A stretch of 64,000 nt of DNA from Cycas panzhihuaensis (GCA_023213395.1 CM041465.1:34169741-34233740), one strand, 5' to 3'; shown: positions 8,723-62,420, numbered from the stretch's first letter. Numbers and translations: made by a program. The notes: generated from the letters alone by a model not told the origin.

Positions 8723-9020
8723 TGAAATGAGTTAATGTCACAAGGTCATTACATTAGTTGATTATTTCTAAAATGGGTCTTAAGTGAACTTTACATTAGA
8801 TCACTTAAGTGAAATGCACTTTCATGTACATTATATATAATTTTATTTCACCTAACTGTAATGCTCCCTCTCTCAATATAAAAGTAAAAGCTTAATGGAG
8901 GAGGCTCATTCTTACATCCGCATTTTGTGAGAGCTACTCTCTTTCTCTCAATTCTCTCTTATTCCCCTATTTGTCTTTGTATTTAATGCATGGAGATGAA
9001 GAATAGATCCACTCTTTTCA
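8723..9020 (+). repeat. 3' LTR of the copia element
   Basis: Preceded by the PPT. Matches 1507-1803. Confidence 0.93.
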
Positions 9021-11690: not shown

Positions 11691-11699
11691 TAATCCAAT

Positions 11700-12393
11700 A
11701 TAATAAGAAAAAAAGAATAACTATAATGAGAATTGAAGATTTGTTTGATCAAATGAAAGAAACCAAATACTTTTCTAAAATCAATTTAAAGTTAAGTTAT
11801 TACCAAATCTGAATCAAGGATGATGATATATTCAAGATAGTTATTCAAATAAGGCATCCTAACTATGAATTCATAGTGATGTCATTTGGCTTGACTAGTC
11901 ATCTAGTAATTTTTATATCTAATGAATAATATATTTAGAAAGTATCTAAACACACTTATTATAGTTTTGATAGATGACATCATGATTTATTTAAAGACTA
12001 AGGAAGAGAATAAGGAACACTTGAAGATCATATTATAGCTTTTAACAAAACACTATCTTTATGTAAAGTTAAGTAAACTTGACTTCTAAAAATAACAGGT
12101 ATATTAATTAAGCCATGTCATTTTAGAAGAGGGGATTTTCATCTATCCTCAAAAGATTCTTATAATCCTTGAGTTGCTATCACTAAGGAATATAATTAAG
12201 GTGAGAAGCTTTATGGACCTAGTAGGTTATTATCATAGGTATATGGAAGGATTCTCAAAGATAGAATGCTCTATCACTCCATTACATAGAAAATGGGTGA
12301 AATTTAAATGGACTACTAAATGTGAAGTAATATTCCAATTATTTAAAAAATTACTTACCACTACCCCATACGTAGCATTTGATTCAAATGCAT
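11700..12393 (+). mobile_element. Chromoviral Ty3/gypsy (Tekay/Del-like) RT fragment
   Basis: RIEDLFDQMKETKYFSKINL.., VLIDDIMIY, VRSFMDLVGYYHRYMEGFSKI. Interrupted by E1 at 12394. Confidence 0.88.
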
Positions 12394-13309
12394 TGTGTGT
12401 CATGCGCCTATCTATTATGTCATTACTCTTAATGAAGTATGTAAGCACAAGGGACAACTAATATGATGCAAAATATAATATCATTACAATAGGGAACTGC
12501 GCCTAGTCCTCTCACAACCAGACGCAAACCCAGTAGTATACTAAGAATTGACAGTTAAACTGACTTACACTGAGATTAGAATTATATGATGAGAGGTATC
12601 TTGGATAACTACCTACTACTATATACAATACCATACATCTTATTCTTTCCCTTAAATAACACTATTCCCAATGATCTTAACTATAATAAGTTATAACGAG
12701 TACAACAGTTAATTCTTGTGTGTTCAAAAACATAATTTGTTTATAATAATATTCTTTGTAGGTTGTGATCTGTTCGTAACTCTGAATTAAATCATGATCT
12801 ACTTGTGATCTTGACTTTAACTACGATCTGCTTGCAATCATGACCCCAACCACGATCTACTTGCAATCTTGTCCCATACTACGATCTACTTATAATCTCA
12901 TCTCAAACCATGATCTGCTCGTAATCTTGCCCTGAACCATGATCTGATTGTGATCTCAGCCCAAACCATGATCTGCTCATGATCTTGTCCTGAACCATAA
13001 TCTACTCATAATCTCATCCTGAACCACGATCTATTTGTAATCTCATCCCAAACCACGATCTGCTTGTTATATCTGCCCAAATCGCAATCTACTTGTAATG
13101 TTTACCTAAATCACAATCTACATATAATGTTTGCCTGAATCGTTATTTACTCACAATGCTGACCAAAACTGTAATTTGCTTACAATCCAACCGAACTACA
13201 ATATGCTCGTAATCTGACTGGATTGTAATATGCTCATTGTCCTGACTATTCACTACAATCTAATCGTAAAAGTCTTTACAAAATTATGTGTTCCTTTTAC
13301 CTCAACACA
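12394..13309 (-). repeat. 3' LTR of E1, with a 29-bp tandem repeat (~12770-13260)
   Basis: Aligns with 21577-22384. Unit ~ACCACGATCTGCTCGTGATCTCGTCCCAA. Confidence 0.92.
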
Positions 13310-13449
13310 TCTCCCCCATCAAAATTCCAATAAGTATCCTCACTTATTTTTGAAAAAATTTTCCATTCCTTCCCTTCCTTTCAAAAAAGGTAATTAATAA
13401 TTACTTACACATCATTTAATTCTCTACACAACTGATTCATTGCTTGATG

Positions 13450-15200
13450 AATGTAATTTGCACCAGGTCAGGCAATAGTTGCTGGAATTCAGATTCCCTG
13501 CAATTGACAATGATCTACTATGATTGTAACGTCTCAAAGTGCATCTAGCTATGCCAATGTTGGTTTCTCTCCTTTATGTAACTTTGAGATTTCTTCCTTT
13601 TCTTCATTGTGCATCTTTTCCATTCTTATTAAATCCTAGCACAAATGATAAATTCTTGACAAAAATCTATTTATGTGTTGCGCTTCCTTCTCAATCTCTA
13701 ATATCCATGCATCTAGCTTAAGAATTACATCCTATAATCCTAGAAGAATCTCCTATTGGAAGCGGCTTTTAAATTCTTGTACCTTCGAAGAAATCTCATT
13801 TGTATTCTTGACCCACAAGATAAATTCCTTTAAAAATACTAATTGAGCTTCTGTTGCTGCCAATATATCGTCTAGATTTTAAATTCTTTGCATATCTAGC
13901 GGTGGTCTTGAATTCCTTTGCTCCAACTTTGTTACCAGTTGCCTTGTCACCCTTGCCAAAAAGGAAGTTTTCCATTGAGAAACATCCTATGGATCATAAT
14001 GTAATGGATCCAAGCCCTCCTCCAGGTAGTCTTTTGACTGATTGAATTCTACCTCTACTAGTTAATTGTTCAATACCTCTAAAATTTCTTGTTATCTCTT
14101 TTCTACTGCCTGCTTCCTCCTTTTCTAATTTTCTTCTTCTTCACACTTCAAGGGCTCAACTGTCTTGGCTTCTTCTATTCTAGTTCCTTTATGACAGGCT
14201 CTTCTTCTACCTTTCACTTCCCCTCCCTTATTTTTGCCTTTAATTTCTTCTTTTCTCTTTGCTTCCCTGCTGGGTTTTATAATATTTCTTCTATTCATGG
14301 CTTCTTTTCCACTTCTTCTTGCACTTTTAGGCCTCGGTGGAGAGTGTTAACTTGCCAACATGCCTGAATCTAGGTAGTAACTTATTTATGTAGTTTTTCT
14401 TGTTGTGATGCACCCCTTTCATGATCCCTTGAGTAGAATTCTGTCCACTTAGCCAGAAGAGGTTGTCCTTCTTCCACCATTGGTAACTAAATTCCTAGGC
14501 ACTATGAAAAAAGAAAACCTTGAAATAAAGTGGGATAAAGAAATAGGACAGATTGAATGGCACCTCTCACTACTTCCCAATTCTATGAGAACTTGGCAGC
14601 GACAAACTTGGCCCAATTGAAATTCTGGCCTTCGGTAACATTGATCAACATCATTCAGAGAGGGGTTGGTATAAATGAATTTTTTTGGCCAAGAATAATA
14701 CTTGTGAATACAAAATAGGTAATCCAATGCATTTCCTTTGGCGAAATGACTAAAATCTAAATTCGTGAAGAAGAAACATCCAACTCTTTGGCTCTAATCT
14801 CCTGAGCAACTTATTCCTGAGATATCTGCTTGTCCTTGGGGATATCTGGGCCTTCGTTTGGTAATCTAGTTACTCTTGTGATTGCATTTGTCAAGCAATC
14901 TAATAGAGATGGTTACCACATTACTAGCACCATGGTCGTTGATAGAAAACTGCATACATTCGGAAGCACTCCAACCAATACATACCGATCGAGGCCTGCA
15001 ATGGTCATTTTTTTCCTACACTCATCTTCTAGTTTTATTTCATGCCACTATCTCTGAATTTGTTCATCCTCAAATTCTCGAAAGATAGCTATCATCCTCT
15101 GCCATTCTGTTGCCATCACTTACTTCCTCGGCTTTTCCTTCTCTGAGTAGTTCCTTGTTCTCCCATTCTTGCCTTAATAATTGCTCATGGCTCATGCATT
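13450..15200 (-). pseudogene. Degenerate accessory ORF of E1, between integrase and PPT
   Basis: Minus frame gives EDECRKKMTIAGLDRYV..AITRVTRLPNEG followed by an E/K-rich tract. Homologous to E2 46700-48310. Boundaries approximate. Confidence 0.65.
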
Positions 15201-18200
15201 AATTTAGCTCATCGCCTTCCTATCTTGTCACAATCATGGAAAGGCAATCATTTAAGATTACGATCACATTCCTTAATAATAATCACCTTTTTAATTCTCA
15301 TGTGAATTTAATGACCCTATCACATTAAGATCTTTTAATAATGACCTTAACTTTGCATTTAATTATGATCACTTTTAAATTATTTGCCACATTTGTCTTT
15401 AAAGGTCACCATTTATGAGGTCGTTATTCATTCTCCCATGATCATCTCTTCATGATGGCACAATTACTACCCTATATTTTGCATCATTTTTGTTTTTAAA
15501 TCTCAAGGTATAAGGCTTCAGCCTACTACCATTCACCATCTTTGTTAATATTCTACCATTAAGATATATAAGTTGGACTACTCCATTCGCACCTATATGT
15601 ATTACCTTGTATGGTCCCAACCAGCGCAGCTTCAACTTCCCTAGTTTTGTATGAAATTTACTATTGTACATCAGTACTAAGTCATCCTCTTGAAATTACG
15701 GTGTTCTTATGTGTTAGTCATGTTAGACTTTCCATTATTATTTCTCTGTTTGTAATTCCCACAATGCTCGTGTCCTTTTTCCATCCAACTTAAATAATTC
15801 CATAGTTCGTAAGTTCCATGAGTCTTGTTCATTCATTCTCAACTGTGATACCACTCGAAAATTTTCCAATTAGAATTCTAATAGAAGTGCTACTTCTAGT
15901 CCATACATCAATTGAAAGGGTCTCTATTTATGTGGTCACTTGATCGTTGTCCTATCGACCCAAAGAATATAATGTAAACATTTTGCTCAATCTATTCTTC
16001 CTTTGCTGCATATTTTTGATAGGGCAATCTTCAAAATTTTATTAGTACTTTCTATCTGACCATTTTCTCTAGGGTAGTAAGGGGAAGAATGAAAATGTTG
16101 GATCATAAATTCATTAGTTAACTCTTTTATAGTACTATTTAAAAATCTACTACCTTGATCTGATACCAATTCTAATGGGTAACCAAAACAGATAATAATG
16201 TCTTCATATAAAAATTTTATAGTACTTCTTGTATCGTAATGTCCAAAGGGTCCAGCTTCGGTCTATTTTATGAAAAAGTCTATGACTACTAATATATATC
16301 TTGCATTTGTTTGTTTTGTTGGGGGACTTATTAGTTCAATGAAGTCTAACCCCTATTTTTCAAAAGGTGCCTATGTTAAAATTAGATGTAGAGGCATAAA
16401 ATGATTCTTGCTTAGCTTACCCACCTGTTAGCACGCATCGCATCCTTTTATCCATTTTTTCGTATCCTCGAATATTGATAGCCACCAAAAGCTTGCCAGT
16501 AGGATTTTTCTGACTATCGGTTCAACTCCTTGGTGCTTGGCCATGACCCCTTTATGTGCTTCTCACAAGATGACTTACACCTCATGCTCCATTATGCAAC
16601 ATTATAACACACCATCTGAACCTAATTTGTATAGCATCCCTTGTACCAATTGGAATGGAAAAGTTTTATGAAGAAAACTTTATCGTTCAACTCTCTCTAG
16701 CCATTTCATTGTCTATCCAGTGGCTAGGTATTTCACAATCCCTTCATACCATTTTGATATAGCCTTTATAGACAACAATTGTGTATCTGGAAAGTCATCT
16801 GGTACTCTTGTGGCTAGTTCCCCTTCCACTTCCCTTTAAAGCATATATGGTATCGTATGTTTGTCGCCTTTTTTAACTATAATTTTGAAATTAAATTCTT
16901 GAAATGACATCACCCACCTTCTAATTCTTCCTTACAAAATAGGCTTAGTTATTAAGTATTTCAAATCTTAATGATCTACATAATAAATGAGCAGGTTAGC
17001 TAGCAAATAATGCCTAAACTTTTGTAGGGTGTAAACCATGCCTAGACCTTCTGGCTCTATAATTGAATAATTTCATTTAGCATGGGTTAAGTTTTTGTTG
17101 GCAAAGTGGATAGGCAAATCCACATTGTTATTACTAGGTTTCATTAGAATACATCCTATTTCCATCAAGGAAGAATCAACATGAATATAAAATGGTTGAT
17201 CCCAATCTAGAAATCTTAAGGTAAGGGCTTCAACATTTTTTTTTTTAGCACTTTGAATGCTAGTTATTGTTGTAAATTCCATTCTCAGGCTACTTTTTTC
17301 TTGAGCAATTTTTCTAAGGGATTTACAATTTGTGCATATCCTTTAATAAATTTCCAATAGTACGCTATCATACCTAAAAAGGCATTCATCTGCTTCACTA
17401 TTTTAGGGACTCAAAATTTTAGAATTATTGTTACTTTAACTAGATCTGTCCGTAGACCATCCTTGCTTACAATATGCCCTAAAAGAGATCTAAATAGAAC
17501 TAAAAACATACATTTTGCCAAGTTTCAACAAAGCTTACTCTTCTGGAACATCTCCAACATTACTTTCAAATTTACCAGTTGATTCTTTAGCAATGAATAC
17601 AGTGTCTAATCATCTAAGAAAACTTCAATGGACTTACCAATTGCATGCTAGAAAATGTTTATAATAATTCTCTAAAAGGTAGCTGGTGTATTTATTAAAC
17701 CAAAGGGCATTACCCCGTATGAATATATCCCCCGTTCGGTGATAAAGGTTGTCTTCAACTGATCTTGCTCCATAATTCTCAGATGGTTATGTCTATTGAA
17801 TCCATCCATGAATGAGTAGACTTCATAACTTGCTACCTTTTCTGGAATATCCTTTGTGAATGGTATTCGAAATGGGTCTCTTTTTGTTGCTTTATTAAGG
17901 ACTCTGTAATCCATATAAACACAAAGCTTCCAGTTCTTTGTGGGTACCACCACTACTAGGCTTACCCATTCACTGGTTTCAACTTTAAAAATATATCCAA
18001 CTTCCAATAATTTGTCCAATTCTGCTTTCAACTTTTCCTTATATTTTAGATTCATCTGATAAGGATGGTGGCGAACTGGTTTCGTTCCCTCTATTAACTT
18101 GATTCGATGTTCTCCCAGTTCTAGTGGTATCCCTTTTAAGTCCTGATAAACATCTTTATATTCCAAAAACAAACTTATGGCATGTTGTGTAATCTCCTTA

Positions 18201-21200
18201 TCCTAATATACTCCTATTGGGATTAATTGGGGATGTTCTTTCATGCCTACATCTATCTATTGTATCTTCAATTGTTTGCTCTGTATTGCCTTGCCATCTT
18301 AATTCAACATATATGCTAGTGTTTTCTCGATTACTCTGTTCCCATACTCTATGTTAGAATATTCCTCAGGAAATTCACCACCTTTTTGTTCTACTTCAAT
18401 TTGATTACAACTTAACTCAATTCCTATTTCAGAGGTGTTTATCTAGGAATCATCAATATCTCGAAGTGTGGACAAGTTACTATCTTGGTTTTGAAATCTT
18501 AATAAAAACTTTTGCACAATTCATTCCATGATCTAAACTTACTACTATTAATCAAGAACCATGCTGCAACTTGACCCTTAAGTGACAATGCAAACAAATA
18601 ACAAAAATATTGATGTTGATTATTATTTGTTAACAATTAATTATAATAGTTTATATGATTTTTGGCCTAATCTGCTTATCCCTAGAACTTTCTTCTGTTA
18701 TTAAATTTTTCCTCTAGTCTTAGTATGCTCTATGATGCTTCTTTTCCTGTTACGTCATTTGATTCTGAAGAATTCATACATGCTTCTAACTTATAGCATG
18801 AAGCAAATTCTATCTTTACCTAAGTGTTCTACAGCCAATTCATCATATATGTTGATGATGCATTACTTGCTACATTTGTTTAAAGTTAATATACCACTTT
18901 CGAGCATGGGCTTATAATGGGTTTTGATCCCATAGTTGTGGATGAAGCTCATTCTTCATTAGCTATCTTCTCCATCTGAGGCCCATCCAAGCATAATAGC
19001 AAGGTCACCGCTTTATTTTTGGCTTTTAGTATGAATGTGAATCCCCCTGGTCTTGAATTGCTTTTGTTGCCAGTAACCACGTCTCCCTAGTAATGCGGGA
19101 TGCATTCTTTTTTCATTTTGCATTTGCACCACTGCAAAATCTAATAAAACAATGATTCCTATAACCGTGGTTGGAACATTCATTAATGTTCCCATTGGTC
19201 TTACTTGCAACTAGTTGGATGGTCTAATTAAATAGTCCAGGGCTACTGTTTCTAGCCTTTCTAATTCTATCCAAGAAGACTTAGGGAGCACATTGACTCC
19301 TGATCCTCCATCCACAATTATTTTATATAACATTGTGCCAAAAATGATCATTGGCACTCTTGGATCGACCCCTTTTTCTTTAATAGCTATCATGACGGGT
19401 TTTTCTATCTAATCTAAAATCAATTACTGAAAATAGCCAACTTCCCACAATTTAAATACTACCACAATAGGAATTGAGACCCCTAACTTAATCAATAAAT
19501 CCTTAACCATCTAAAGCCTTGACCATGGATTCATGCCTTCCTTTGATTGAATTTTTGTAGGGGACATCTATCGCTTATATATTTGTCCTTTCATTCTTCT
19601 TGATGAGCTTCTTCTTGATGTACTTTACCCATTATATCTTGTAAGATTTTGACAGATTCTTGGAGTCTCTACTTTTCTACTACTAGATCCAAAAAGGTAT
19701 CCTAGATAGGTGTGGAGGTTGTCTTTCTATTTCACATTTGCAATTGGAGAGGCACTTCCTTATCTAGAATTATTGAGGCCAAATTCGTATTTTGCATGTT
19801 ATTCTTTGGACAATTTATCCACTCATAGTCTATCGATCCACATTCTTCACAAATGAATTCTCCATCCTTTTTTTCTAATGGGTAGTTTGATCTTAAATGA
19901 CACCATTTTTTACATAAAAAATATCTGACTAACTTGGTATTTCCTTTATATTACTTTTTTGTTTTCTTTAGCTTTTATAGGAATACATTATGGATATCAT
20001 TCTTAGGACAAGAAAAACACTCCCACTTATTGTGCTTTGTTTTCTTACAATACTCGCATCATGCTGGTGTTTTATTATGTTTGTTCCTCAGATGCCCTTA
20101 TTAGTTACATGGTGATAAACACCATATATTTTCTCATGATTTTTTTAGATGCAACTTGGCAAGTTCTGAACATAAATTCTCCATCTCTTGATTTTGGTAC
20201 ATATTAGCCAGGTTTGCCACTGATGGTTGTTGTTTTAATGCTTCCACTTCCCTTCTTAACACCTTGATCTCTGGATTTATTCTTGTTTGATAATGTGCCC
20301 CCCATACTCGCTGAGAAAGAATTGGACCCATTTTCCCTATCTGTTGATTGGCCCATTGAGAGTATGTAGTCTTCATTTGATTTTCAAACTTCAAAGCTAA
20401 CCCACGTATTTGTTCGTAGCTATTCATCGGATGCAACAAAATTTTATCTCTCAATTATAGAATTAGTCCTTGCACAAAATATTTCATTGTTAGCATTGGG
20501 CTAATTGCTGTTATTGGCTACATTTTACTCATTATTATCTACATACGTCTATCAAAATTATTTACAGATTCTCTAGGATACTATTTTGTTTCTTCTAGGG
20601 CTTCGAAAATGGCCATGGGATCTCTTAATTTTTGGAATCAATCTAGAAATTGATCTTGTATTCTATCCCATTATAGATTATGTGCTGCAACATACCAGAA
20701 CCATGCAACTGCTACTCCCCGTAAGGTGGAAAAGAAATAAGCTTTTGTCTCCTTTGGGTTTGTAACTTTCTTTATCTTTAACATATTTTTAAACAATTCT
20801 AAATGATCTCCAGGTTCTGTTGATCTATCAAATTGTATGCTCAAGAATGTAAAATCATTTTGCATAATTATGTAGGGACATGTTGATCCAGCTCCACTTC
20901 TTTGGCTCATTCCTTACAATGGTAGATTGCCACTTCCTCCTACATTCGTAAACAACAATTGATTCGATGATGATCCACCATCTCCTTAGTTTCCTCCTGG
21001 TGGTATACTTCCCCCGCCTGTATTTCGATTGGAGCTTTCCATTGTAACTTTGAATAATGGATTCAAAATGTGGCTTAAGGGAGTTCTAACTTCTACCAAA
21101 TGATGGTTCCACTCTTTGTCTATTGTGCTATATAATTCTAGTTCGATCAAACTATTTCTTCTTTCCTGTATTGAGAATTCTTCCATGATTTCTTTATGGA

Positions 21201-21576
21201 TTTCCTTCATCTGATCTTCTACTTTAGGGGGATCCTCTTCCAATGTGTACCCTTGGTTACTTTCTATTTTGATTATCTTTTCTCTGATAGACTCCTCCAA
21301 TATTTTCACCTCAGTTCGCCTTTCCTCCTCCTTACTTGACTTTTTTCTTGAACTTGAGCTAACAAGTGGTCACATTTTCACTTGCTTCCTTGGCGTAATT
21401 ACAAATCTTAGCTTTCTTACTCTACCCTAGAGTCTATCATTCTCCAAATGCTTTTCACATTCTTTTTATGATTCTTTTTCTACCTTGGATGGCATGGAAG
21501 AGGTTTCATTATTTACTTGGCTCTATCCATCATAATATCGCTGAGTCCTCCAGATTTCATTAGACAATGGAACCAA

Positions 21577-22384
21577 TGTGTGTCGTGCACCTATCCATTA
21601 CATCATTGCTCTTAATGAATTATGCAAGCACAATGGACAACTAATATAATGCAAAACATAATATCATTACAATAGGGAATTGCACTTGGTCCTTTCCTAA
21701 CTAGACACAGACTTGGTAGTACACTGAAAATTAACGATTAAACCAACTTACACCGAGATTGGAATTAATTTTAAAAGGCATCTTAGCTGACTACCTAGTG
21801 TTGTATACAATACCATATATCTCATTCTTTCCATTTTCCCCTTAAATAACATGATTCCCAATGGTATCAACTATAATAAGTTACAACGGGTATAATAGTA
21901 AATTTTCGTATGTTTAAAAACATAAGTTATTTATAACAATATTCTTTAGTGGGTTGTGATCTATTTGCAATCTTGACTTAAATCATGATCTGCTCATGAT
22001 CTTAACTTCAACTACGATCTACTCATGATCACAGCTCCAACCACAATCTACTCGCAATCTCGTCCTGGACTATGATCTGCTCGTGATCTCGGCCTGAACC
22101 ACGATCTGCTCGTGATCTCATCCCAAACCACAATCTTCTCACAATCTCAACCCAAACCTTGATCTCCTCGTAATGTCTACCTAAATCATGATTTGCTCAT
22201 AATGTCTACTCAAATTGGGATATGCTTGCAATGTCTACCCAAATTGCGATATGCTCACAATCTAACCAAACTGCAATCTACTCATAATCTGATCGGATTG
22301 CAATTTGCTTGTTGTCCTGACTATTCACCACGATCTAATCGTAAAAGTCTTTATAAAATTGTGTGTTCCTTTTGCCCCCCCACA
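21577..22384 (-). repeat. 5' LTR of E1
   Basis: Matches 12394-13309 with fewer 29-bp units. PBS immediately downstream on the minus strand. Confidence 0.92.
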
Positions 22385-22389
22385 CGCAT

Positions 22390-24258
22390 ATTATGTGTAT
22401 ATTGAAGGCATTGGAGTAATGTTAATGTATAATAGAAAAGTAGTTTTCTATTAATTAAGGAAGCTAAAAGATCATGAAAAGAACTATCATATGCATAACT
22501 TAAGCTTGTAATTATTATTCATGTATTAAAGGCATGGTGGCATCATTTTCTTAAAAATCCATTCAAGATAAACACAAATCATGATAGCTTGAAGGACGTC
22601 TTCACATAGCCACAATTGAATGTGAAGTAGAGGAAATGGATGGAGTCCAATATGAGTATAATTTGCAAGTACAACATATTAAAGGAAAAGAGAACAAAGT
22701 AATTGATACACTTAGCTGAAGGAGGCATGTTGCTTCAATAAGCATCAATGAATCAAATTCAAAGGTAACCATAAGGCAAAAGTTGTTTAATGATGAATGC
22801 TATAATGAAGTGTAGGATTTCTTAAAGAGGAAAAATGAATCAAGACCAATAGATGCTAAACTACTACATAAGTTTGGGGGATACAAAATAATAGATGATG
22901 GGTTTCTCATGTTTCAAAATCAAATCTAAATGCCCATAGGCATGGGAATTTAGACAATCGTCATAAAAAAGACTCATGTACCATATGCAAGTCATCTAGG
23001 TTACCAAAAAATATATGTAGTAACCGAAAAGCATTACTTTTGGGCTGGTATAAAAATGATACTGTGAATTATGTTGCAAAATATTTACAATATTAGAAGG
23101 TCAAAATTGAACACAAACATTCAATAGGTTTTAGACAACCATTAGACATTCCATAATGGAAATGGAAAACTATATCTATATATTTTATTACAGAATTGCC
23201 TAAGAATTTAGGGAAGCATGATTCAATCATGGTAGTTATGGATAACTTAACTAAGTCTACACATTTCATTCCAGTTTGTACTACTCACATAAACTCTGAC
23301 ATAACTATAACTTTTATAAAAGAGATTGCAAGGATGTATAGCATTCCAAAGGCCATCGTTTCAAATAGGCATACAAAGTTAACTTTAAAGTTTTAGTGCA
23401 CCTTATTTTTAGAGTTGGGAACCGAGTTAAACTTTAACATTAAGTGCCATCCCAAATCCAATGGACAAGTTGAAAGGGTAAATTAGGTTCTTGAAAACAT
23501 GCATCGCATGTACATAATAGAATAATTGTTCAAGTAGTAAGCTTATTGTATTTTGTGAAATTTGTATATAGCAACACCTACTACTCTTTGTTAAGCATGA
23601 GCGCTTCTGAGGCATTGTATGGGTGGCCATGTAGTGTGTCACTCAACTAGAAAATTTTGGAAGATGACCCTGTGATTTGCCTTGACATGCTTAAAAAAAT
23701 AGAGTGACAAGTGGTCAACATTTAGAAACACTTGAAAGTAGCTTGGATATGTAAAAGAGATATGCAGACATGAAAGGATCAATGGAGGAGTATAGTGTTG
23801 GAGAGCACACTTTTCTACGAATCAGACCTAAGTATAATTCACTCAAATTGGGCATTTGTAAAACACTTACAACTAGATATTATAGTCCATTTGAGATCTT
23901 GAAATGGATAAGCTTCTATAGCTTATAGGTTTTCTCTATCTCTAAACTTAAGAATTCATGATGTGTTTCGTATTTCTTTATTAAAAAATATATGCTCGAC
24001 TCTAAACACATCTTTGATTGGACTACCATTGAGATAAGACTAGGTTTTGAGTTTGAACAGGAACCATTGTGAATTCTAGAGGATAAAGAAAAAAGCTTGA
24101 AAAACCATGTCATCAAGTTTATCAAAGTTCTTTAGAAATATTTGACTCCTAGGGAAGCCACACAGAAGCTTAAAGAAGAGATATGACTTATCAACACCTT
24201 TATTTGTTTATAGGAAAATATCACATTAGGAATGATGCTTCTAATAAGGGGAGGGGGA
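22390..24258 (+). mobile_element. Chromoviral Ty3/gypsy continued: RNase H, integrase, chromodomain, PPT
   Basis: RKLKDHEKNY, GKENKVID, integrase ORF 23196-23396 (DSIMVVMDNLTKSTHFIP), chromodomain-like EPL.IL..KVL.K...EAT (~24060-24180), PPT AAGGGGAGGGGGA 24246-24258. Confidence 0.88.
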
Positions 24259-28916: not shown

Positions 28917-30671
28917 TCAGGGAGCAGAAGGACCGAGACCCAAATGAAGATCCAACCCATTGGTATCATCAATGATAGGGGATTGATTCACCTTTAGGTG
29001 GGACTGCCCAGCCAATTCATTAGTGCCACCACCGTGAGGCTGACAAAGCCTCGCTCCAGAGTGAGTTGCACCGAGCGTTTCCAATTCTGAGGCGGCCTGA
29101 GGTTGAATCAAGTTACCCAAATGCCTGGCCTGCGCCCTTGCTTGGAACGGCGACGGCGAATTCATGGAATATGGGCTTTGGCTTGGGCTTGACCCAAAGG
29201 CTCCGTAAGTGGGAGACACAGAAGAGAAGCCAAACTGAGCGCCGCCAGATTGGGGGACATAAAACCATGAAGAACGTCCGGCTTGAAGACTCGATCCAAA
29301 ATATCCCAACCCTGCAGGCGGCTGCTGATACCCTAATACATGCGGGAATGGAGAGGGCGGCGCAGGGAATCGAGGGTTAGAAGCTGGCGGGATCTCACCA
29401 CCGCCTCCAAAAGCGCATATATTGCGTGCAGCGTGCGGATTCAAGAGGGCAGAACCAGGGAGGCGATGCATGCCGAAAATATTAGTATTCCCATGACCCG
29501 GTCTGCCAACTGCGCCACTCGCAGCGGCACCTCTGCTGGCCTGTATCTGCGCCCGCTTGGCCTGTTGTCTTTCCTTCTTGTGTGCATTCTGATGTCCTCC
29601 CAGGGCTTGAGAATTCGCAAACTCCCTGCAGCAATATTGGCATTCGTATTTGCGACTATCCGAAGCTGAATTGCTACCGCTTTCTGCACCCTGTAAGCTC
29701 ATGTCTTTGGAAGCTGATCTCCCTTCCGCCGATTCCATATCTCCTAATTCCCCACGGCCATCCTCCTGAGTTAGGTGAACATTAATTCCCATCTTCGCAT
29801 GGCAGCCTCCGTGCATTTGGGCTTCGCGATCTGCCGATAATGATCCGTCAATCTCGTTTCTATATGACCAGTTCCCATCAGTGGACGCAGAAGCGCTCGT
29901 TACATCGCCAACCTGCGTCGGCATCTGCTTCAACTCGAACCCAAACAATTTCATAGCCTTCGACTCCTTTCTGTTAACATCCTCCGATGCACAGAGATCT
30001 TCGGTCAGACCCTCGCTACCCTGGTCCCTGCCGAAATCTCCTTGCTCGAGATCTTCATCTCTGTAAACCCCAGCAGTCGCGCCGCGATGGATTCCAAGAG
30101 TAAATGACGAAGGGGCAACCGTTTCTTCCCGACTCTCATTATTAATCCCAAGATTTTGGTTGTGAAGAGGGGGTCTGGCATGCAGATCGGTGCACTCCTC
30201 CACCACTTCCTCCCCCATGGAACTCTCCGTCTGGCGGTGCCCGGTAAAATTGCATGGATGCTCCGGTTCACGTCTGATGAGCCTTTTCAAGACTTGACCG
30301 GCACCTCCATCGGCCTTTGGCCTGAATAGATAAGACGGTGAACGACTCGAATCCTCACCGGTTGCATCCGAGCCGTCGGGAGGGCGCCATGGATTCTGCT
30401 GGGTTGCTGCAGCTCTGCAATCCTCTTCCTGCTGCCGCTGCAGTTCCAGATTCGATTCTGGGTGCCGGGGACGCTTAGATGGCATGGGGCCGAGCACCAG
30501 AAGACGACCTAATAATCCATCAATACGCGATGATTTTCTCCCGCTAATTCCTCGTTCTGACAGGGTAATCTTGGCAAGTTCCGGCACGAATCTATTGGCG
30601 TTGGATGGTAGCGGTACAGCACACATGAACCGGCTTCTCGCCGCCCTGGTTGGCCACTTAAAATCAATCAA
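28917..30671 (-). CDS. Single Q-type C2H2 zinc-finger transcriptional repressor, ZFP5/ZFP6/GIS3-like, apparently intronless. The ORF-track start is TTG; in-frame ATGs at 30626 and 30485 (522 aa) are likelier starts
   Basis: Uninterrupted GC-rich ORF with [29 protein letters not shown], a KLFGF motif and a C-terminal EAR motif (LDLHLGL). Confidence 0.93.
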
Positions 30672-39477: not shown

Positions 39478-40089
39478 CATGTGCAGATAGATTAGACTAA
39501 TTGTAAGTACGACTTAACCAATACGACCAAACCAGTGCAAGTGTGACTAGATCAGCTGCACGTACAACTAAATCAACCATAGGTGTGACCGAACCAGTTG
39601 TAGATGTGACCAGACTAGCCATAGGTGTGACCAAACTAGTTTCAAGTATGACTAGATCAACCGCGGGTATAACCAAACTAATTACAAGTGTGGCCAGACT
39701 AGTGTAGGTGTGACCAAAAGACACATAAGTATGATTAGGGTGGTTAAAATATGACTTGACGTATTAATTATAGTGTAATAGAAGTGGTTGTGGAACCACT
39801 CAAGGAGTAAGAGTAGTTATAACTATAAAAGATATATTTATAGTCATATTGTGAAGGGAAAGAGACATATTTGAGTGTGTGAGGAGTTTCTTTTTTGTGT
39901 TGTTTGCCACTTATACTACAACATTTTGTACTCTATCTTGGCCTGTGTCTAGTTGTGAGAGGACCAGATGCAGGGCCTCCTATTAATAGAATTAGTTTTT
40001 AGGCTCTGTATTCTTTGAGCCATTTTATCTGCTCAATGTTATTATGTATATTGTAATATTAATAGTTAGGGCAGAAAGTAGGGTACCCA
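39478..40089 (+). repeat. 5' LTR of E2, with a 21-bp tandem repeat
   Basis: Aligns with 48444-49082. Units ~GGTGTGACCAGACTAGTTGCA, 39500-39730. Confidence 0.9.
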
Positions 40090-43000
40090 TCAGTTCCATT
40101 GCTGGCTATCCAAATGTAGGAGGAGAAGGATGAGTGTTCAAGAATAAGGAATTACAAAAGGGCTATCCATACCACCAAGAGTGAACTCTACAAGGAAAAT
40201 AGAGACATGACAGGAGTGAAGCCAAGGTTAGGAAGTAGAGAAATTATAGGAAGGGACCACAAACCTAAGGAACCCATGGAGAGGAAGCAGGTAGGAAGAA
40301 GACAACTTATAAAGGGGCAATAGGAAGAAAGTCTGACCCCAAGAAAATGAGAAGATCAGAGTAAGGAGAAAGAAGAGGAGATAGGAGATCAATCCTAAGC
40401 AGAAACCTAAAAAGGAAGTGAGGAAGATCAAGCGAAAATTTAATTAAGGTATACAGAGGATAGAGCCCTAGAAGAAGAAAAAGATAAACAAGTAAGCACA
40501 GAAGAAGAAAGATCGACAAGATTTGAAGTTTATAGTACCACTGTGGTAGGATGGGACTGCCATATTATGGAAATTAGGGATTCTTACTCTCACGTTTTGA
40601 ATCCATTATTCAACAAAATAGTATAAATGATTTTTGGTACATTTTTCTTGGGAGGAAGTCCATAAAGTATAAATGTTACTCCCCCTAACATAATAAACCT
40701 TGTAGGAGGAGGGCGAGTTTAGGAGTTCTAAAGGGGAATACAAATAAGAATTCACAAAGTGGCCTAAGTTCAGTGGGACTAGTGAATACAACGCAATGAT
40801 ATATGGTAGGGGGAAATCAAGTAAACCATTGATATATTGTCATTCAAAATGATGCTATATTCGAGCACCTACAATTTCATGGCTCAAGTGACCCAAGAGA
40901 CCATTTAGCCCTCTTTCCAATATGTTAAAAATAAAAAGACTTCAAGATCCTAAAGAGATTAAAGCTCAATTTGTTTCAATATTAAGAGGAGTTGCAATAG
41001 ACCAGTACTAGTATATTTCAGTAGCCAATCTAATATGGGAGGTGATTCAGACATATTCTTGGATAGGTTCCAAAGGCTACATGATCCAATGGCTATTTTT
41101 TAGGCCTTGGAAGAAATTAGGCAAATACTAGGTGAGTTTGTTAATGACTTTGATGGTAGATTAAGAATCATTATGAATAAAATGGATCATGTGATTCCTA
41201 TGAATCCTATGTTATCCTTGAAGTATTTTATCCAAGGATTGTTACCCCACCTAAAGGAGAAAGTCACTTTGCATCCATTAAATAATTATAAGTAAGTAAA
41301 AGACTTAGCTCTAAGGTTTAAAAATAAAATCAAAACAGGATACCTACAGCTAGGTTTTCAGATGGTTGGATAAACATTGGAAAATATTTCTTAATGGGAA
41401 ACAAATTCTAAGCTAGAAGCATTGAAAAAAGAGATTGAAATGTTAAAACAGTAGCCATTTACTTTACTTCCTACAATAAATCAACTAAACCAAAAGATTA
41501 AAAGGTTAAGAACTGAAGTAGCTAGATTGAAATTAGAGAAGATATGAGAAAATATATGGTGTCCTCCACCTTGTGGATAAGTTGGATATCTAATAAATGA
41601 GCATCCATAGTTTCTAGAAAAGAAATGGTGTTAAATATATAGATGAAATAATCATAACACCTGGAAGTTTTATCATAGGACACTAAGAAATGAAGTGCAA
41701 GATTCCTTTTATTAAAAAATAGATCAAAATTCCTTTTAAACAATATAAAGGAAAAAGAAACTAGTATAGTGTCATTTATGCTCCAAATGGGGTTATTACC
41801 GGATAGATTATCCATTACAAAAGTAGGAAGGAGACTATATTTATGAAGAGTGTGGTCTAACAAACCACGAATAGGTGAATTTCCACAAAAATATTGGTCC
41901 CAAAATACAAACTTCTAATCTGGCAACAAAAATACTAGATGTTGAGCAACCAATGTATGTGTAAACGAGGAATAGAAAGACAACTTCCACACCAGTCGAA
42001 GAGAATTTTATGAATCTAGTGATAGAGAAAAGGAGATTATAGGAAGTAATACAAGCCTCATAGGAAGTAATAAAGACAATCCAACAAGAAGTAATAAATC
42101 AAGCAAATAGATACAAAGGGCAGGTATATCAAAGAAGAACAACCTTTCAGGGAGAACAATTAGAGAAAAATCCTTGATAGAGGTTGCACGAAGTGAAGGA
42201 TCTTGTAATGGAATTAGGAGTCTTAGTTCCCATTGCTACTATCTTCAGGTGGTGGGAGGCAGGATACTTTCAACAAGTGATACTAGATCATATTGAGAAA
42301 CTATTGCTATGAGCCTTGAAGACCAAATCCATTGATCCCAGAGTTCGAATGACTCTTCCTAGAACAAAAATTTACAAAACCATTGTGGATGGTGGATCAG
42401 GAGTAAATGTACCTCCTAAAACAACATGGATCTCCTTGGGAAGGCTTGAAATGGTTTCCCTAAATTATGCCATAAGATTAGCAAATTAGTTATAGGTGAG
42501 ACTAACGGGGACTTATTGAATATACTAGTGGAAGGTGCAAGCATTTCAGTCTATTTAGACTTCACAGTAATAAGGATGCAAAATCATCAAAAAACCTACC
42601 CAACATTATTGGGAAGACTTGGCTATTGGAAACTGAGTCCTTATAGGATTAGGAAAGGCTAACATTCACTTTACATGCAGCAGGAAAGAAAGTAGTACTT
42701 TCCCTCTATTCATACAGTCCCTAAATTGAAAAGGTAGAAGATGTAGATACAACATCTACTACAACAACCACACCAGTAACTACTATAAGTCCCTACTAAG
42801 AAACAACATTCCAGGCCTTGAAGACTCTGCCTCATCTTCTAAGTGAAGCCTCATCGACATATATATTAGATTAGTTACAAATATCATAGGAGGATATAGG
42901 AGCAGAAGCACTAAACTATTACCACCTAGAGTTATGTAAGGACAATTTAAAGGATATGATGGAAGCTAGACAAACTTCAAATCAATTAACTTAGGAAGAA

Positions 43001-46000
43001 AAACAAATAGGTAACATGAAGAAAATTGAGGAGTTACCTCAGTATTAGGGGAAAAGAGGGGGATCAGAAAATTATATAAAATTTTTTGTTGAAATTTTAA
43101 ATGATAAAAGAGATGATCAGTTATATTTATTTGTTTTGACTCTATTTAGACAAGCACTATAATGGTTTAGAGCACACTAGAATTAGTTTTCTAACTGGGT
43201 AGATTTGAAAATCTACTTTTGATTCATTTCAAAGTTTTGATGATCAAATTCCCATGTTTTAAAAAGATCCTAAACAACATGTTCAGGACTGTATAACTAT
43301 GTGGGAGAGGATTCATAGGCTCGAAAGGAAATAGGTACATCAGTTACCTATATCCCTTATAGGTACTAGCCTGATTTACTACCTAATAGAAGAAAGAAAA
43401 TATCAAGGGAGTTGGGATTGGGTAGAAGCAGTTAAAGGATTTATAAAGACTTTTTCTTCTCCCTTATCAAAGGTGGAAGACTATCATCAGTTAGAAAAAG
43501 AAGAGGAAAGGAAGAATTCTCCTACATCTTACTCCTATATGGAGTATGTATAAAAGGAAATTTATCAAACTTCAGCTTACCAGTTATAATCAGATGGGAA
43601 AACTATTCAAAATGAGGAGTTATAATTGAAAGGAATTAACATTAGATCAGAAAAAGATCCTAGGATGATAACCATTAGAGACTACTAGGAAACATAAATG
43701 ATACAGAAAGAAATAGAACTTTTTATAGAATATAAAGATATCTTTCCTTGATCCTATAAGGACCTCAAAAGAATTCCTCCAAAACTCAAAGAACATAAGA
43801 TTAAGTTACTGGAAAACACCAAGCTAGTAAGATAGAGACCCTACCAAATGAATCCTATATATAAAGAGCAAGTAAAGGAAGAATTAAACAAACTTTTAGA
43901 AGCAGGATATATTTTTAAAGTAGAAAATAGTGAGTGGGTAAGTCCAGTAGTGGTCATCCCAAAAAAGAACAAGAAATTACAAACTTATATAGATTATGGA
44001 GCTTTAAATAAAGCCACAAAAAAGATCCATTTCCAATTCCCTTTATAGAGGATGTATTAGAAAAGGTGGCTAGACATGAGATGTTCTTTTACTGATGGGT
44101 TTAGTGGCTATAATCAAGTTCAAATAGCCCTTGAGGATCAATCCAATATAGCGTTCATGACAGACTGGGGTACTTACATATATACAGTAATGCCCTTTAG
44201 GCTTCCTAATACACCTGTCACTTTTCAAAGAATAATCTTAAACATCTTTTAAGAAATGATAAGAAATACAGTAGAAGTTTTCCTTGATGATTGGACCTTA
44301 TACAATTTACTTAAAAACCATCTAACTTAGTTGAAATTGATGTTAGAAATTTGTAGGAAAAGTCAATTGTGCATGAATATAGAGAAATGTACCTTTATGG
44401 TACCATTCGAATCATTGTTAGGGCACATAGTAATAAAGGAAGGACTGCTGACTAATATAGCCAAAGTTGAAATCATCCTAAAATTTCTAGTTTCATAGAA
44501 TATGAAAAATTTGAAAGGATTTTTAGTGATTACTCAGTACTACTATAAATTTATATGGGGTTATGCCCATATCGCTTACCCCTTAGAATCATTGTTAATA
44601 AAAATAGTGGCTTAGAATTGGACATTGAAGCAATAACTATCATTTGATATTTTGAAAAAAAAGATAGTGGAAGCTCCTGTGTTGAAATTTCTAGATTGGA
44701 ATAAGCCATTTCATGTTCATGTGAATGCTTTGTTATATGATATTAGGTGTATTTTGGCGCAACCAGTAGATGAAAAAGTAGATCTTCTTATCGCTTTTGC
44801 AAGTAGGAAGTTAACTTCTGCAGAATGTAACTACACAGTTACAGAAAGAGAAGGATTAGGTATGATATATGCCTTACAGAAGTTTAGGCATTATTTACTA
44901 GCTAATGCTTTTGTGTTTTTCATGGATCATCAGGCTTTGTAATGTTTAATTAATAAACCAATCTTACAAAGTAGAAGAAGTCATTAGTTAATGCTTTTCC
45001 AAGAATTTATGTTCAAGATTATAGTGAAAAAGGGTGAAAAACACATTGTACTAGACCAACTTTCAAGAATTCAGGAAAGAGAAGCGACAACAAGGGTTTC
45101 AAATGATTTTCTAGATTACAAATTATTATTAGTGGAAGATGTTCCCCCATGGTATGAAGGTATTATTGAATACCTACCAACATAGCAAATGCCATAAGGA
45201 TTGGGTATGATGGAAAGAAAGAGCTTTATTAAAATAACCTTTCCATTTTAATTGATAGGGGGAACGTTGTATAGGATGGGACCTGGTGAGGTATTGAGGA
45301 TGTGCATACTTGAGCATGAGGTGCAGGCTATGCTTCAAGAAGCCTATGTGGGGGCAACATCAACTCATCATGGAAGTGAAGCCATTGTGCAAAGATATTA
45401 TTGGTAGGCCTATGGTGGCCAACACTATTTGAAGACTCAAAAAATGGATAAGAATTTGTGATGTATGTCAATGAATAGGTGAGCCTTAAAAGAATATTTT
45501 TTTACCATTACACCCTATATTAGCTTAGGCCCCATTTGAAAAATAGGGATTGGACTTTGTAAGACCTATCAATCCTCCTACAAAAAGAACCAATTCTAGA
45601 TACATTTTAGTGGCAACTAATTTCTTAACAAAATGGATAGAATCCAAAACTATGAAGACGTGACACTAGAAGCACTGCTTATTTTCTATATGAAATGATT
45701 ATAGTGTGATTTGGTTGCCCATTAGAAATAGTCTCAGATTAAGGGGAGAGCTTTTTGAATCAAACTATTAAACATCTAACAACATAATTTTTGATACAAT
45801 ATGGCAAATCCTCACCTTATTACGTAAGAGCAAATAAGTAGGTGGAAAGCACCAACAAAATTTTAAAAAATGCTTTAATAAACATTTATAATGCATAACA
45901 TACTGACTAGGTAGACATGTTACATTCAGTCCTATGGGTAGATATGACAATGAAGAAAAGTCCTCATAAGCACACACCCTTCCAGTTGGTATATGGATTA

Positions 46001-46610
46001 AAAGCAGTGGTCCCCCTTAAATTTTAGGCAAAAAGTCTTTGGGTAGAACATCAACTAAGATTGGAAGCGGAAGACTCATACGATTAATAGTTACTATAAT
46101 TATTGAGATTATATGAAGAATGTGCTAGGGTTTTATGGGAATTACAAATAGAAAAAAGAAGAAGAAAGGTATGGCATGATGGCCATTTAAAGGTCTCAGC
46201 GTATAAAGTAAATGATTTAGTATTATTGTATGACAATAACTTTAGAATAAAACTAGGAAAAATAAAAGTCAGATGGCTAGGATCTAATAGGAAATCATAT
46301 TTATGAATGGAGCAGTTGAATGGTAAACCATTGACAAAGCTCATCAATGGTAGTAGAATAAAATTGTATAGGTATTAAGAAAAAATGAGCACAAAAATCA
46401 ATGGGATAGATTGTCAAGTTAGTTAATGGTACCCATTAGAGCTAATGATGTGATTAGACAAAGTGGTTAATTTAAGTGACAAATGAAATAATGAAAAATG
46501 GTGGTGGTTGTTAATCAACTACCAAGATTATGGGGTGTACAAAAGTAGGTGTGACCATCATTAGTAATAATGAACCACGACAAGCAAAAAAGACAGGTAT
46601 AATAATCTAA

Positions 46611-48443: not shown

Positions 48444-49082
48444 TGTGTGCAGATAAATCAGACCAATTATAAGTGTGATAGGACCAATGAAGGTGTGACT
48501 AGACTAGTTACAAGTGTGACTGGACCAGTGTAGGTATAACTAGATCAGCCATAGGTGCAACTAGACCAGTTACAGCTATGACCAGACCAGTCGCAAATGC
48601 GACTGGACTAGTTGTAGGTGAGACCAATCTAGTCACAAGTACAACTGCACCAATTTCAATCGTATCTAAACTAACCACAGGTGTAACCAAACTAATGTAA
48701 GTGTGATTAGAAGATATGCAAGTATAACCAATGTAATTAAAATATAACTTAATGTATTAATTATAGTGTAATATGACTAGTTGTGGAACCACTCAAGGAG
48801 TAAAAGTAGTTATAACTATAAAGGATGTATTTATAGTTGTATTGTGAAGGGAAAGAGATAGATTTGAACATGTGAGGAGTTTCTTTTTTGTGTTATTCAC
48901 CACTTATATTGTAGCCTTTTGTACTCTATCTTGGCCTATGTCTAATTGTGAGAGGACTAAACATAGGGCCTCCTGTTAATGGAATTGGTTTTTGGGCTCC
49001 ATATTCTTTGTGCCATTTTGTTTGCTCAATGGTATCATGTATAATAAAATATTAATGGTTAAGGTAGAAAGTAGGGTACGCA
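48444..49082 (+). repeat. 3' LTR of E2
   Basis: Follows the PPT, TG...CA, matches the 5' LTR. Confidence 0.92.
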
Positions 49083-49087
49083 TCACA

Positions 49088-57949: not shown

Positions 57950-62420
<4,471 letters not shown>

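What the first reader, a model, noticed from the sequence alone, without database searches (positions are those of the whole stretch)
18490..18695. Second Gag capsid-like domain inside Pol, between protease and RT (E1; also in E2)
Downstream of the protease the minus strand reads KF*G*AD*AKNHI...YLFALSLKGQVAAWFLINSSKFRSWNELC..FLLRFQ (last block after a frameshift). This echoes the element's own Gag capsid (QFDRSTEPGDHL..YFFSTLRGVAVAWF..WDRIQDQFLD) and the retrotransposon-gag pattern F-x2-L-x-G-x-A-x2-W-F...W-x2-L-x3-F. Canonical Ty3/gypsy Pol is PR-RT-RH-IN with no capsid domain. The same domain at the same place in diverged E2 argues for a conserved family trait, not a stray insertion. Hypothesis: a capsid-like module left on RT after proteolysis docks the enzyme into the particle lattice or tunes assembly. 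I do not know of a description of this architecture, but could not search for one.
Basis: partly seen in the sequence, partly recalled or inferred. Interest (0 to 1): 0.85.

Follow-up and report, generated by a model that had tools for sequence, protein, structure and literature searches.

The report
Extra capsid-like piece inside retrotransposon Pol
Two long-dead plant Ty3/gypsy retrotransposons in this window each carry a second, partial copy of their capsid (Gag) N-terminal domain between protease and reverse transcriptase, an arrangement I found no description of; whether it ever did anything could not be tested.

Summary
On the coding strand of element E1 (12394-22385, minus) the stretch 18699-18455 lies between protease and RT. 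It matches a profile of natural retrotransposon Gag capsid domains at 42.8 bits, against 45.7 for E1's own Gag. The best of 3.2 Mb of composition-matched decoys scored 22.7. The diverged element E2 (39531-49085, plus) has the orthologous piece at 43034-43264, at 28.8 bits against 28.4 for its own Gag.

[quoted passage not shown] It has no C-terminal lobe and no zinc knuckle. It shows no insertion boundaries and is collinear in both elements. In E1 it shares a reading frame with its flanks apart from two frameshifts.

It is not a recent copy of Gag: identity to either Gag is 22-27%. The closest relatives I could reach (RT 45-57% identical) lack it. No intact family member could be fetched.

Most likely this is an ancient in-frame partial Gag duplication or capture in the variable PR-RT spacer, carried by active ancestors. 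A role as a capsid-binding module is inference only. Verdict: real feature, new variant of a known kind, function untested, interest about 0.5.

The parts
18455..18699 (-). E1 CA2: second Gag capsid N-terminal-lobe-like module in the PR-RT spacer. It is decayed, with 4 stops and 1-3 frame breaks.
   Evidence: Profile-to-DNA alignment: 42.8 bits (profile columns 2-85 of 131) against a decoy maximum of 22.7. With a shorter profile: 29.5 bits and 0 of 5.1 Mb decoys at or above 27.4. hmmsearch on the six-frame translation gave iE 0.0015-0.01.
43034..43264 (+). E2 CA2a: ortholog of E1 CA2.
   Evidence: 28.8 bits to the Gag profile (columns 3-74). 33.5 bits to the E1 CA2 reading against a decoy maximum of 27.5. 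Collinear flanks.
43347..43517 (+). E2b: possible second, weaker Gag-N-lobe-like unit. It lies inside the roughly 56-70 aa that E2 has extra between CA2a and the pre-RT region. Uncertain.
   Evidence: 21.6-22.3 bits to the Gag profiles, with 3-4 decoy hits that strong per 5.1 Mb. Only noise-level similarity to E1 CA2. AF2 gave three helices at low confidence.
20515..20829 (-). E1 canonical Gag capsid (CA1).
   Evidence: 45.7 bits to the Gag profile; hmmsearch iE 1e-7.
19806..19919 (-). E1 remnants of two CCHC zinc knuckles after CA1 (cysteines decayed; approximate coordinates).
   Evidence: Direct reading of the translation. The clearer counterpart is in E2 at 41770-41883.
19046..19408 (-). 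E1 aspartic protease (D-G-G-S-G active site, L-L-G-R motif).
   Evidence: Reading; tblastn of relatives covers 19076-19375; tblastx against the E2 PR.
18700..19045 (-). E1 spacer between PR and CA2. Its conserved pieces are in the same reading frame as the first part of CA2.
   Evidence: tblastx blocks collinear with E2 42662-43006; frames read.
15453..18403 (-). E1 pre-RT region, RT, RNase H and integrase.
   Evidence: tblastn coverage by up to 237 relatives.
12394..13309 (-). E1 3' LTR, containing a 29/58-nt tandem array.
   Evidence: Self-BLAST; end alignments and target-site duplication TGCAT/CGCAT; TRF.
21577..22385 (-). E1 5' LTR.
   Evidence: 80% identical to the 3' LTR with transitions:transversions 131:28.
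40872..41241 (+). E2 canonical Gag capsid (CA1).
   Evidence: 28.4 bits to the Gag profile. 66.5% DNA identity to the E1 gag.
42313..42653 (+). E2 protease.
   Evidence: Reading; tblastx against the E1 PR; tblastn 42370-42617.
43431..46369 (+). E2 pre-RT region, RT, RNase H and integrase.
   Evidence: tblastn coverage; blastn against E1.
39531..40092 (+). E2 5' LTR (BLAST-defined ends).
   Evidence: 79% identical to 48524-49085.
48524..49085 (+). E2 3' LTR (BLAST-defined ends).

Best explanation
CA2 is a real, inherited piece of Gag. [quoted passage not shown] This happened in an ancestor of the E1 and E2 families, which are non-chromovirus, Athila/Tat-like Ty3/gypsy elements of a GC-poor seed plant, probably a gymnosperm.

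Shown:
- Its Gag-like identity.
- Its extent: N-lobe only, no C-lobe and no zinc knuckle.
- Its position and strand.
- Its collinearity in two elements.
- The absence of insertion boundaries.
- Both carriers are dead copies (LTRs about 80% identical).

Inferred:
- It was translated as part of Pol in active ancestors.
- It stayed under some purifying selection. Both copies still fit a Gag profile as well as the elements' true Gags do, although they are only 28% identical to each other.

Most likely mode of action, on low confidence: a capsid N-lobe mimic that binds Gag N-lobes. This would tether Pol products to the assembling shell or damp or time assembly, as the N-lobe-only protein RTL8 does with PEG10.
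For: - Whole-window profile scans find only four strong Gag-like sites: the two Gags and the two spacer sites.
- Scores were 42.8 bits (E1 CA2) and 28.8 (E2 CA2a), against 45.7 and 28.4 for the true Gags and a decoy maximum of 22.7.
- No decoy reached the E1 score in 5.1 Mb.
- Orthology of E1 CA2 and E2a: 33.5 bits against a decoy maximum of 27.5, with collinear flanking blocks.
- In E1, everything conserved from 19045 to 18517 is in one frame. PR, the second half of CA2 and RT are in another. So two frameshifts account for the whole stretch.
- There are no repeats or boundaries around the segment.
- E1 is a complete element with a target-site duplication.
- The distance from the PR motif to the RT core is 378 aa in E1 and 448 aa in E2, against 210-322 aa in relatives. 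The extra length fits one added domain.
- The same slot is known to accept another domain, aRNH, in gymnosperm Tat elements (PMC13468544).
- An N-lobe-only Gag-like protein that binds a capsid N-lobe and enters particles has a precedent (PMC11684626).
- Ty3 capsomers are built from N-lobes (PMC6525542).
Against: - Only two decayed copies exist and no intact family member was obtained. An open PR-CA2-RT frame is therefore inferred, not seen.
- The nearest reachable relatives (RT 45-57% identical; Riccia, Selaginella, unnamed assemblies) have one Gag and no Gag-like hit in the spacer.
- CA2 diverged much faster than Gag: 28% against 54% identity between E1 and E2, with tree branches of 1.1 against 0.2-0.55. 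This fits weak constraint.
- Pfam does not call the stop-free pieces, although it also misses the true Gag and PR pieces.
- AF2 on the fragments gave only helices with no usable fold.
- The Gag profile I used is home-made from 31 sequences.
- In Ty3 the N-lobes face outward while Pol lies inside, so simple docking into the lattice is not obviously possible.
Confidence: 0.6

Rival explanations
1. Neutral passenger. A Gag fragment was copied into the PR-RT spacer by template switching during reverse transcription. It was merely tolerated there as in-frame filler, with no role in the particle. Its Gag-like look is residual ancestry.
For: - Spacer length varies widely among relatives, from 210 to 322 aa.
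- CA2 is no better conserved between E1 and E2 than the rest of the spacer: 28-33% against 38%.
- It has long tree branches.
- Only one capsid lobe is present.
- It is absent from the nearest reachable relatives.
Against: Both copies still score as high against a Gag profile as the true Gags of the same decayed elements. They do so despite being only 28% identical to each other and 22-27% identical to Gag. A segment drifting freely for that long should have lost the profile hallmarks in at least one lineage.
Confidence: 0.3
2. Post-mortem contamination. A fragment of another element's gag landed in the already dead copies, or the region is a nested insertion with its own boundaries.
For: Nesting is common here. 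E1 itself sits inside another gypsy element.
Against: - The segment has the same collinear place, strand and flanking blocks in two elements at different loci.
- There are no terminal repeats, target-site duplication or LTR-like boundaries.
- The frame is continuous with the upstream spacer.
Confidence: 0.03
3. Chance resemblance of AT-rich decayed sequence to a short Gag motif.
For: The stop-free pieces get no Pfam or PDB sequence hit. Pairwise similarity of E1 CA2 to the E1 Gag is at decoy level (26.5 against 27.5).
Against: Composition-matched decoys never approach the profile scores: 0 hits in 5.1 Mb and 3.2 Mb. The only strong hits in the 128 kb of both strands are the two Gags and these two collinear sites.
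Confidence: 0.02
4. The long spacer holds a different known insert: the additional RNase H that some gymnosperm Tat elements carry between PR and RT.
For: That architecture exists in gymnosperm Tat elements (PMC13468544). The extra length of about 130 aa would fit.
Against: A profile of aRNH domains from five relatives finds nothing anywhere in E1 or E2. The Gag profile does hit the spacer.
Confidence: 0.02

Closest known systems
Canonical Ty3/gypsy Gag capsid (Pfam Retrotrans_gag PF03732, Ty3_capsid PF19259; Ty3 and Arc structures)
   Same: CA2 has the same sequence profile over the N-terminal lobe. That covers the F-x-G start, the helix with L-x-G-x-A-x-x-W and the following W...F...F helix. 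It scores as high as the elements' own Gags.
   Different: CA2 sits inside Pol, after the protease. It lacks the C-terminal lobe that makes the lattice dimer and trimer contacts in Ty3 (PMC6525542). It also lacks the zinc knuckles. It is only 22-27% identical to the Gag of the same element.
Tat elements with the 'copia-like' layout (additional RNase H between PR and RT) in gymnosperms
   Same: The same slot in the polyprotein of the same broad group of plant non-chromovirus elements has accepted and kept an extra domain (PMC13468544).
   Different: The inserted domain there is an RNase H. Here none is detectable and the insert is Gag-derived.
RTL8, an N-lobe-only Gag-like protein that antagonises PEG10 particles (mammals)
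   Same: It is a capsid N-terminal lobe without the rest of Gag. It binds the PEG10 capsid N-lobe, is incorporated into particles and lowers their yield (PMC11684626). This is a working model for what CA2 could do.
   Different: RTL8 is a separate domesticated host gene. CA2 is a module inside the element's own Pol, and no interaction data exist for it.
Ty1 p22/p18 self-encoded restriction factor (truncated Gag; recalled from memory, not checked here)
   Same: A partial capsid protein encoded by the element itself that interferes with particle assembly.
   Different: p22 is the C-terminal part of Ty1/copia Gag, made from an internal transcript. It is not an extra domain in Pol.

Membership tests
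Ty3/gypsy LTR retrotransposon (carrier elements E1, E2) | Two LTRs flanked by a target-site duplication | tested here: met
   E1 LTRs are 12394-13309 and 21577-22385, with TGCAT/CGCAT flanks. An E2 LTR pair was found; its target-site duplication was not examined.
Ty3/gypsy LTR retrotransposon (carrier elements E1, E2) | Domain order Gag - PR - RT - RNase H - integrase | tested here: met
   Translations, tblastn of relatives and the Gag profile all give this order, with CA2 as an extra between PR and RT.
Retrotransposon Gag capsid (PF03732 / PF19259), applied to CA2 | Match to the curated Pfam model above its gathering score | tested here: inconclusive
   No hit for any stop-free CA2 piece. The positive controls (the E1 true Gag piece and the PR pieces) also got no hit. 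The reading joined with X at the breaks has no reference, so it was not sent.
Retrotransposon Gag capsid (PF03732 / PF19259), applied to CA2 | Significant match to a profile of natural Gag capsid domains | tested here: met
   42.8 bits (E1) and 28.8 bits (E2) against a decoy maximum of 22.7. 29.5 bits with 0 decoys in 5.1 Mb. The profile seed domains were Pfam-verified as Retrotrans_gag.
Retrotransposon Gag capsid (PF03732 / PF19259), applied to CA2 | Both capsid lobes (N-terminal and C-terminal) present | tested here: not met
   The alignment stops at profile column 85 of 131 in E1 and 74 in E2. The pre-RT region follows within about 15-80 aa.
Retrotransposon Gag capsid (PF03732 / PF19259), applied to CA2 | Four-helix capsid-lobe fold (Arc / Ty3 N-lobe) | tested here: inconclusive
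   AF2 without an alignment gave one long helix for the E1 piece (pLDDT 80) and three helices for the E2b piece (pLDDT 58). There was no tertiary fold to search with.
Retrotransposon Gag capsid (PF03732 / PF19259), applied to CA2 | Followed by a nucleocapsid zinc knuckle | tested here: not met
   No CCHC pattern lies between CA2 and RT in any frame. Knuckle remnants follow only CA1.
Athila/Tat (OTA) non-chromovirus lineage | RT/RH/IN phylogeny with reference sets (REXdb) | not testable with these tools
   No reference library was available. The nearest RTs are bryophyte and lycophyte elements, some with aRNH.
Athila/Tat (OTA) non-chromovirus lineage | Long region or extra ORF between integrase and the 3' LTR | tested here: met
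   About 2.1 kb lies between the end of integrase homology (15453) and the LTR (13309) in E1. A block is shared with E2 (14022-13932 against 47731-47821).
Athila/Tat (OTA) non-chromovirus lineage | Primer-binding site not for tRNA-Met | tested here: inconclusive
   The sequence after the 5' LTR is not the tRNA-Met type in either element. It recalls a decayed tRNA-Asp site, but that is from memory only.
Tat clade, 'copia-like' layout | Additional RNase H domain, here expected between PR and RT | tested here: not met
   A profile from five aRNH domains of relatives gives no hit in E1 or E2.

The most novel reading that the evidence does not exclude
A lineage of plant Ty3/gypsy elements kept, under selection, a capsid N-lobe module inside Pol. 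The module binds Gag N-lobes and so controls how Pol products are recruited into the particle, or how fast the particle assembles. It would be a self-encoded, RTL8-like assembly modulator built into the polyprotein.
Probability: 0.2. Interest if true: 0.75.

Novelty: new variant of a known kind. Interest (0 to 1): 0.5.

Why it matters
Extra domains fixed in LTR-retrotransposon polyproteins are rare. Known examples are the chromodomain, additional RNase H and env-like ORFs, and each has pointed to a step of the replication cycle.

A capsid lobe duplicated into Pol would be a new entry on that list. It would bear on an open question: how elements set the Gag:Pol balance and bring Pol into the particle. 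It would also be a natural parallel to host N-lobe-only proteins that tune capsid assembly.

There is a practical point as well. Reference pipelines deliberately discard elements with a repeated domain type (PMC6317226). Architectures like this one would therefore be filtered out before anyone looked.

If it is only tolerated filler, it still marks the PR-RT junction as the permissive insertion site of this group.

Tried and rejected
- Pfam on 20 stop-free pieces found nothing, but the true Gag and PR pieces failed too, so the result is uninformative.
- The CA2 reading joined with X at its breaks has no reference. It was therefore used only inside scripts and was not sent to Pfam, the structure predictor or the big protein searches.
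- PDB sequence searches returned chance hits only.
- AF2 on the fragments gave helices only, so I ran no fold search.
- My one search of the 1.84-billion-protein library used the RT ORF. The best relatives are 45-57% identical, with one 116-aa fragment at 71%.
- The CA2 piece had no word-sharing candidate among 5.8 billion proteins. The RT ORF found two short unnamed fragments.
- The metagenome scan gave one 35%-identical locus cut at the contig end. The viral scan gave none.
- The idea that the spacer holds an additional RNase H was rejected.
- Gag hits just upstream of RT appear in some database proteins (P0026, P0133, P0009 and others). These are chimeric or repeated chromovirus gene models, not this architecture.
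- DNA-level similarity among CA2a, E2b and the gags is weak (z up to 3.8) and was not used.
- The CA1/CA2 tree is unresolved, so no donor can be named.
- Weak Gag-profile hits in the 3' regions (about 13570 minus, 47289 plus) are at decoy level and not collinear, so I dropped them.

Full report
**Setting**

The window is GC-poor plant DNA (33% GC). It holds one GC-rich host gene, a C2H2 zinc-finger ORF at 28917-30671 on the minus strand. Its best named relatives are gymnosperm proteins from Ginkgo, Cryptomeria and Taxus at 35-41% identity. The host is therefore probably a gymnosperm that is not itself in the protein collection. The very low GC and the 5:1 excess of transitions between LTR pairs recall the deamination-driven decay described for Welwitschia (PMC8275611). 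That is a guess, not an identification. Nothing suggests human DNA.

**The carriers**

- E1 is a complete Ty3/gypsy element on the minus strand, 12394-22385.
  - Its LTRs are 12394-13309 and 21577-22385, flanked by TGCAT/CGCAT.
  - It is inserted into the RT of another gypsy element on the plus strand.
- E2 lies on the plus strand, 39531-49085.
- Both are old. The LTR pairs are 79-80% identical and the coding regions are full of stops.
- E1 and E2 align at DNA level only in gag, PR and RT-IN, at 63-66% identity. Roughly 20 points of that divergence are post-insertion decay.
- Both read Gag capsid, two zinc-knuckle remnants, protease, a long spacer, RT, RNase H, integrase, then about 2 kb before the 3' LTR.

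**Checking the observation**

The quoted minus-strand reading is present. I had no curated capsid model that works on broken sequence, so I built profiles from natural Gag domains.

- The seeds were the Pfam-verified Retrotrans_gag domains of three RT relatives. They were extended by iteration within the 150 relatives found with the E1 RT ORF.
- On the six-frame translation of the whole window, these profiles hit only the E1 Gag, the E2 Gag and the two spacer sites.
- I then wrote a frameshift-tolerant local alignment of a profile against DNA. I calibrated it on reversed and block-shuffled copies of the window.

| Site | Shorter profile | 131-column profile |
|---|---|---|
| E1 Gag (CA1), 20829-20542 | 32.0 bits | 45.7 bits |
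| E1 CA2, 18699-18455 | 29.5 bits | 42.8 bits |
| E2 Gag (CA1) | 24.7 bits | 28.4 bits |
| E2 CA2a, 43034-43235 | 19.0 bits (E2b: 21.6) | 28.8 bits |
| Best decoy | none at or above 27.4 in 5.1 Mb | 22.7 in 3.2 Mb |

The 131-column profile also covers the helix upstream of the Pfam domain. Aligning the E1 CA2 reading, with X at its breaks, to the E2 DNA picks 43080-43264 at 33.5 bits. The decoy maximum there is 27.5, and the flanks are collinear on both sides.

**Anatomy**

- CA2 covers profile columns 2-85 of 131.
- Pfam coordinates on two relatives put my column c at about position c+10 of the 198-position Ty3_capsid model. CA2 therefore corresponds to roughly positions 12-95.
- That is the N-terminal lobe. 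In Ty3 this lobe is a four-helix bundle forming the protruding capsomers, while the five-helix C-terminal lobe makes the lattice contacts (PMC6525542).
- The C-lobe part of the profile and any zinc knuckle are missing. The conserved pre-RT region follows after about 15 aa in E1 and about 80 aa in E2.
- E2's extra stretch contains a second, weaker N-lobe-like unit at 43347-43517. It scores 21.6-22.3 bits, and 3-4 decoys per 5.1 Mb are that strong. It may be a partial tandem repeat or chance.
- In E1 all conserved spacer blocks and the first half of CA2 share one frame. PR, the second half of CA2 and RT share another. Two frameshifts therefore suffice to restore colinearity in a copy that has lost about a tenth of its bases.
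- No direct or inverted repeats bound the segment.

**Origin**

- On shared profile columns, the two Gags are 54% identical to each other.
- The two CA2s are 28% identical to each other, and CA2 is 22-27% identical to either Gag. That is about as far as CA2 lies from the Gags of distant relatives, at 24-31%.
- A tree leaves CA2 unresolved on long branches.
- CA2 is therefore not a recent copy of the resident Gag. It is either an old duplication or a capture from another element, made before the E1 and E2 lines split. No donor can be named.
- The distance from the PR motif to the RT core is 378 aa in E1 and 448 aa in E2, against 210-322 aa in six relatives. The excess equals one or two such modules.
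- The relatives have a single Gag and no Gag-like signal in the spacer.
- Apparent Gag-next-to-RT cases among the database proteins are chimeric, repeated chromovirus gene models.

**Alternatives tested**

- Gymnosperm Tat elements can carry an additional RNase H in exactly this slot (PMC13468544). A profile of that domain finds nothing in E1 or E2.
- Chance is excluded by the decoys.
- A post-mortem nested insertion is excluded by collinearity in two loci and the lack of boundaries.

**How it most likely worked**

Shown: a Gag N-lobe-like coding segment lies on the sense strand between PR and RT in two diverged elements.

Inferred: it was part of the Pol reading frame of active ancestors, and it was not free to drift. 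Both copies still fit the Gag profile as well as the true Gags do, although they share little identity with each other.

The mechanism I consider most likely is an N-lobe mimic that binds Gag N-lobes. The closest working precedent is RTL8, an N-lobe-only protein. It binds the PEG10 capsid N-lobe, enters particles and reduces their yield (PMC11684626).

Simple docking into the lattice is not self-evident, because in Ty3 the N-lobes face outward. I put about 0.6 on the identity-and-inheritance statement with some constraint. I put about 0.2 on a specific assembly function and about 0.3 on a merely tolerated passenger.

**Comparison and novelty**

- The carriers meet the tests for Ty3/gypsy. They look like Athila/Tat-type non-chromoviruses without the extra RNase H, but lineage assignment needs REXdb.
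- CA2 passes a capsid profile test but fails two defining features of a full Gag capsid: both lobes, and a following nucleocapsid. I therefore file it as Gag-derived, not as a capsid protein.
- Full-text searches found no description of a Gag-like module between PR and RT.
- The main plant reference study removed all elements with repeated domain types as presumed artefacts (PMC6317226). Such cases would therefore not be catalogued.

**Limits**

- Only two dead copies were available.
- The profile is home-made.
Broken readings were joined only with X, inside scripts.

**Verdict**

The feature is real and the architecture appears undescribed. It is a new variant of a known kind, its function is untested, and I score interest at 0.5.

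Noticed in passing
window 11657-12437 (+) and 22654-23853 (+): E1 is nested inside a third Ty3/gypsy element (E3) of a different lineage. Its best matches are chromovirus-like proteins. E3's RT homology stops at 12392, exactly at E1's target site, and pol homology resumes beyond E1's other LTR. No Gag-like signal was seen for E3.
   Followed up: partly
window 28917-30671 (-): An intact 584-aa ORF, GC-rich at 54% against 33% for the window. It encodes a plant C2H2 zinc-finger protein with the QALGGH motif and a C-terminal LDLHLGL (EAR-like) motif. Its best named relatives are gymnosperm proteins at 35-41% identity, which hints at the host group.
   Followed up: partly
window 1507-9020: An 89%-identical direct repeat pair (1507-1803 and 8723-9020) brackets ORFs that read like Ty1/copia integrase (5673-6074) and RT (6792-7244). 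This is probably a younger copia element.
   Followed up: no
window 551-1033 (-): A 160-aa ORF that reads like the N-terminal part of a non-LTR (LINE-type) reverse transcriptase.
   Followed up: no
window 12789-13142 and 21958-22373: E1's LTRs contain a 29/58-nt tandem array of about 6-10 units. This accounts for the length difference between the two LTRs (916 against 809 bp). E2's LTR has a short 21-nt array at 39577-39639.
   Followed up: partly
window 58000-59800: A 1.8-kb low-complexity array of TA/TG/TC-rich short units, self-similar on both strands. It produces long artefactual ORFs.
   Followed up: no
window 51357-57900: Two further nested direct-repeat pairs: 51357-51746 with 57512-57900 at 83%, and 53361-53735 with 55855-56236 at 86%. 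They suggest more old LTR elements or solo structures. No pol homology was detected there.
   Followed up: no
window 21563-21576 (-) and 40094-40110 (+): The putative primer-binding sites of E1 and E2 share a T-T-C-C-A-T-T-G core and are not of the tRNA-Met type. They look like a transition-decayed tRNA-Asp site, but that is from memory only.
   Followed up: no
window 18681-18683 (-) and 43046-43048 (+): The codon between the conserved F/Y and G at the start of CA2 is a stop in both elements: TAG in E1, and a stop in E2 whose codon I did not read. If the E2 codon is TGA, both would be one G-to-A change from TGG, so a decayed tryptophan codon would be a simple explanation rather than a conserved stop. 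This was not checked.
   Followed up: no
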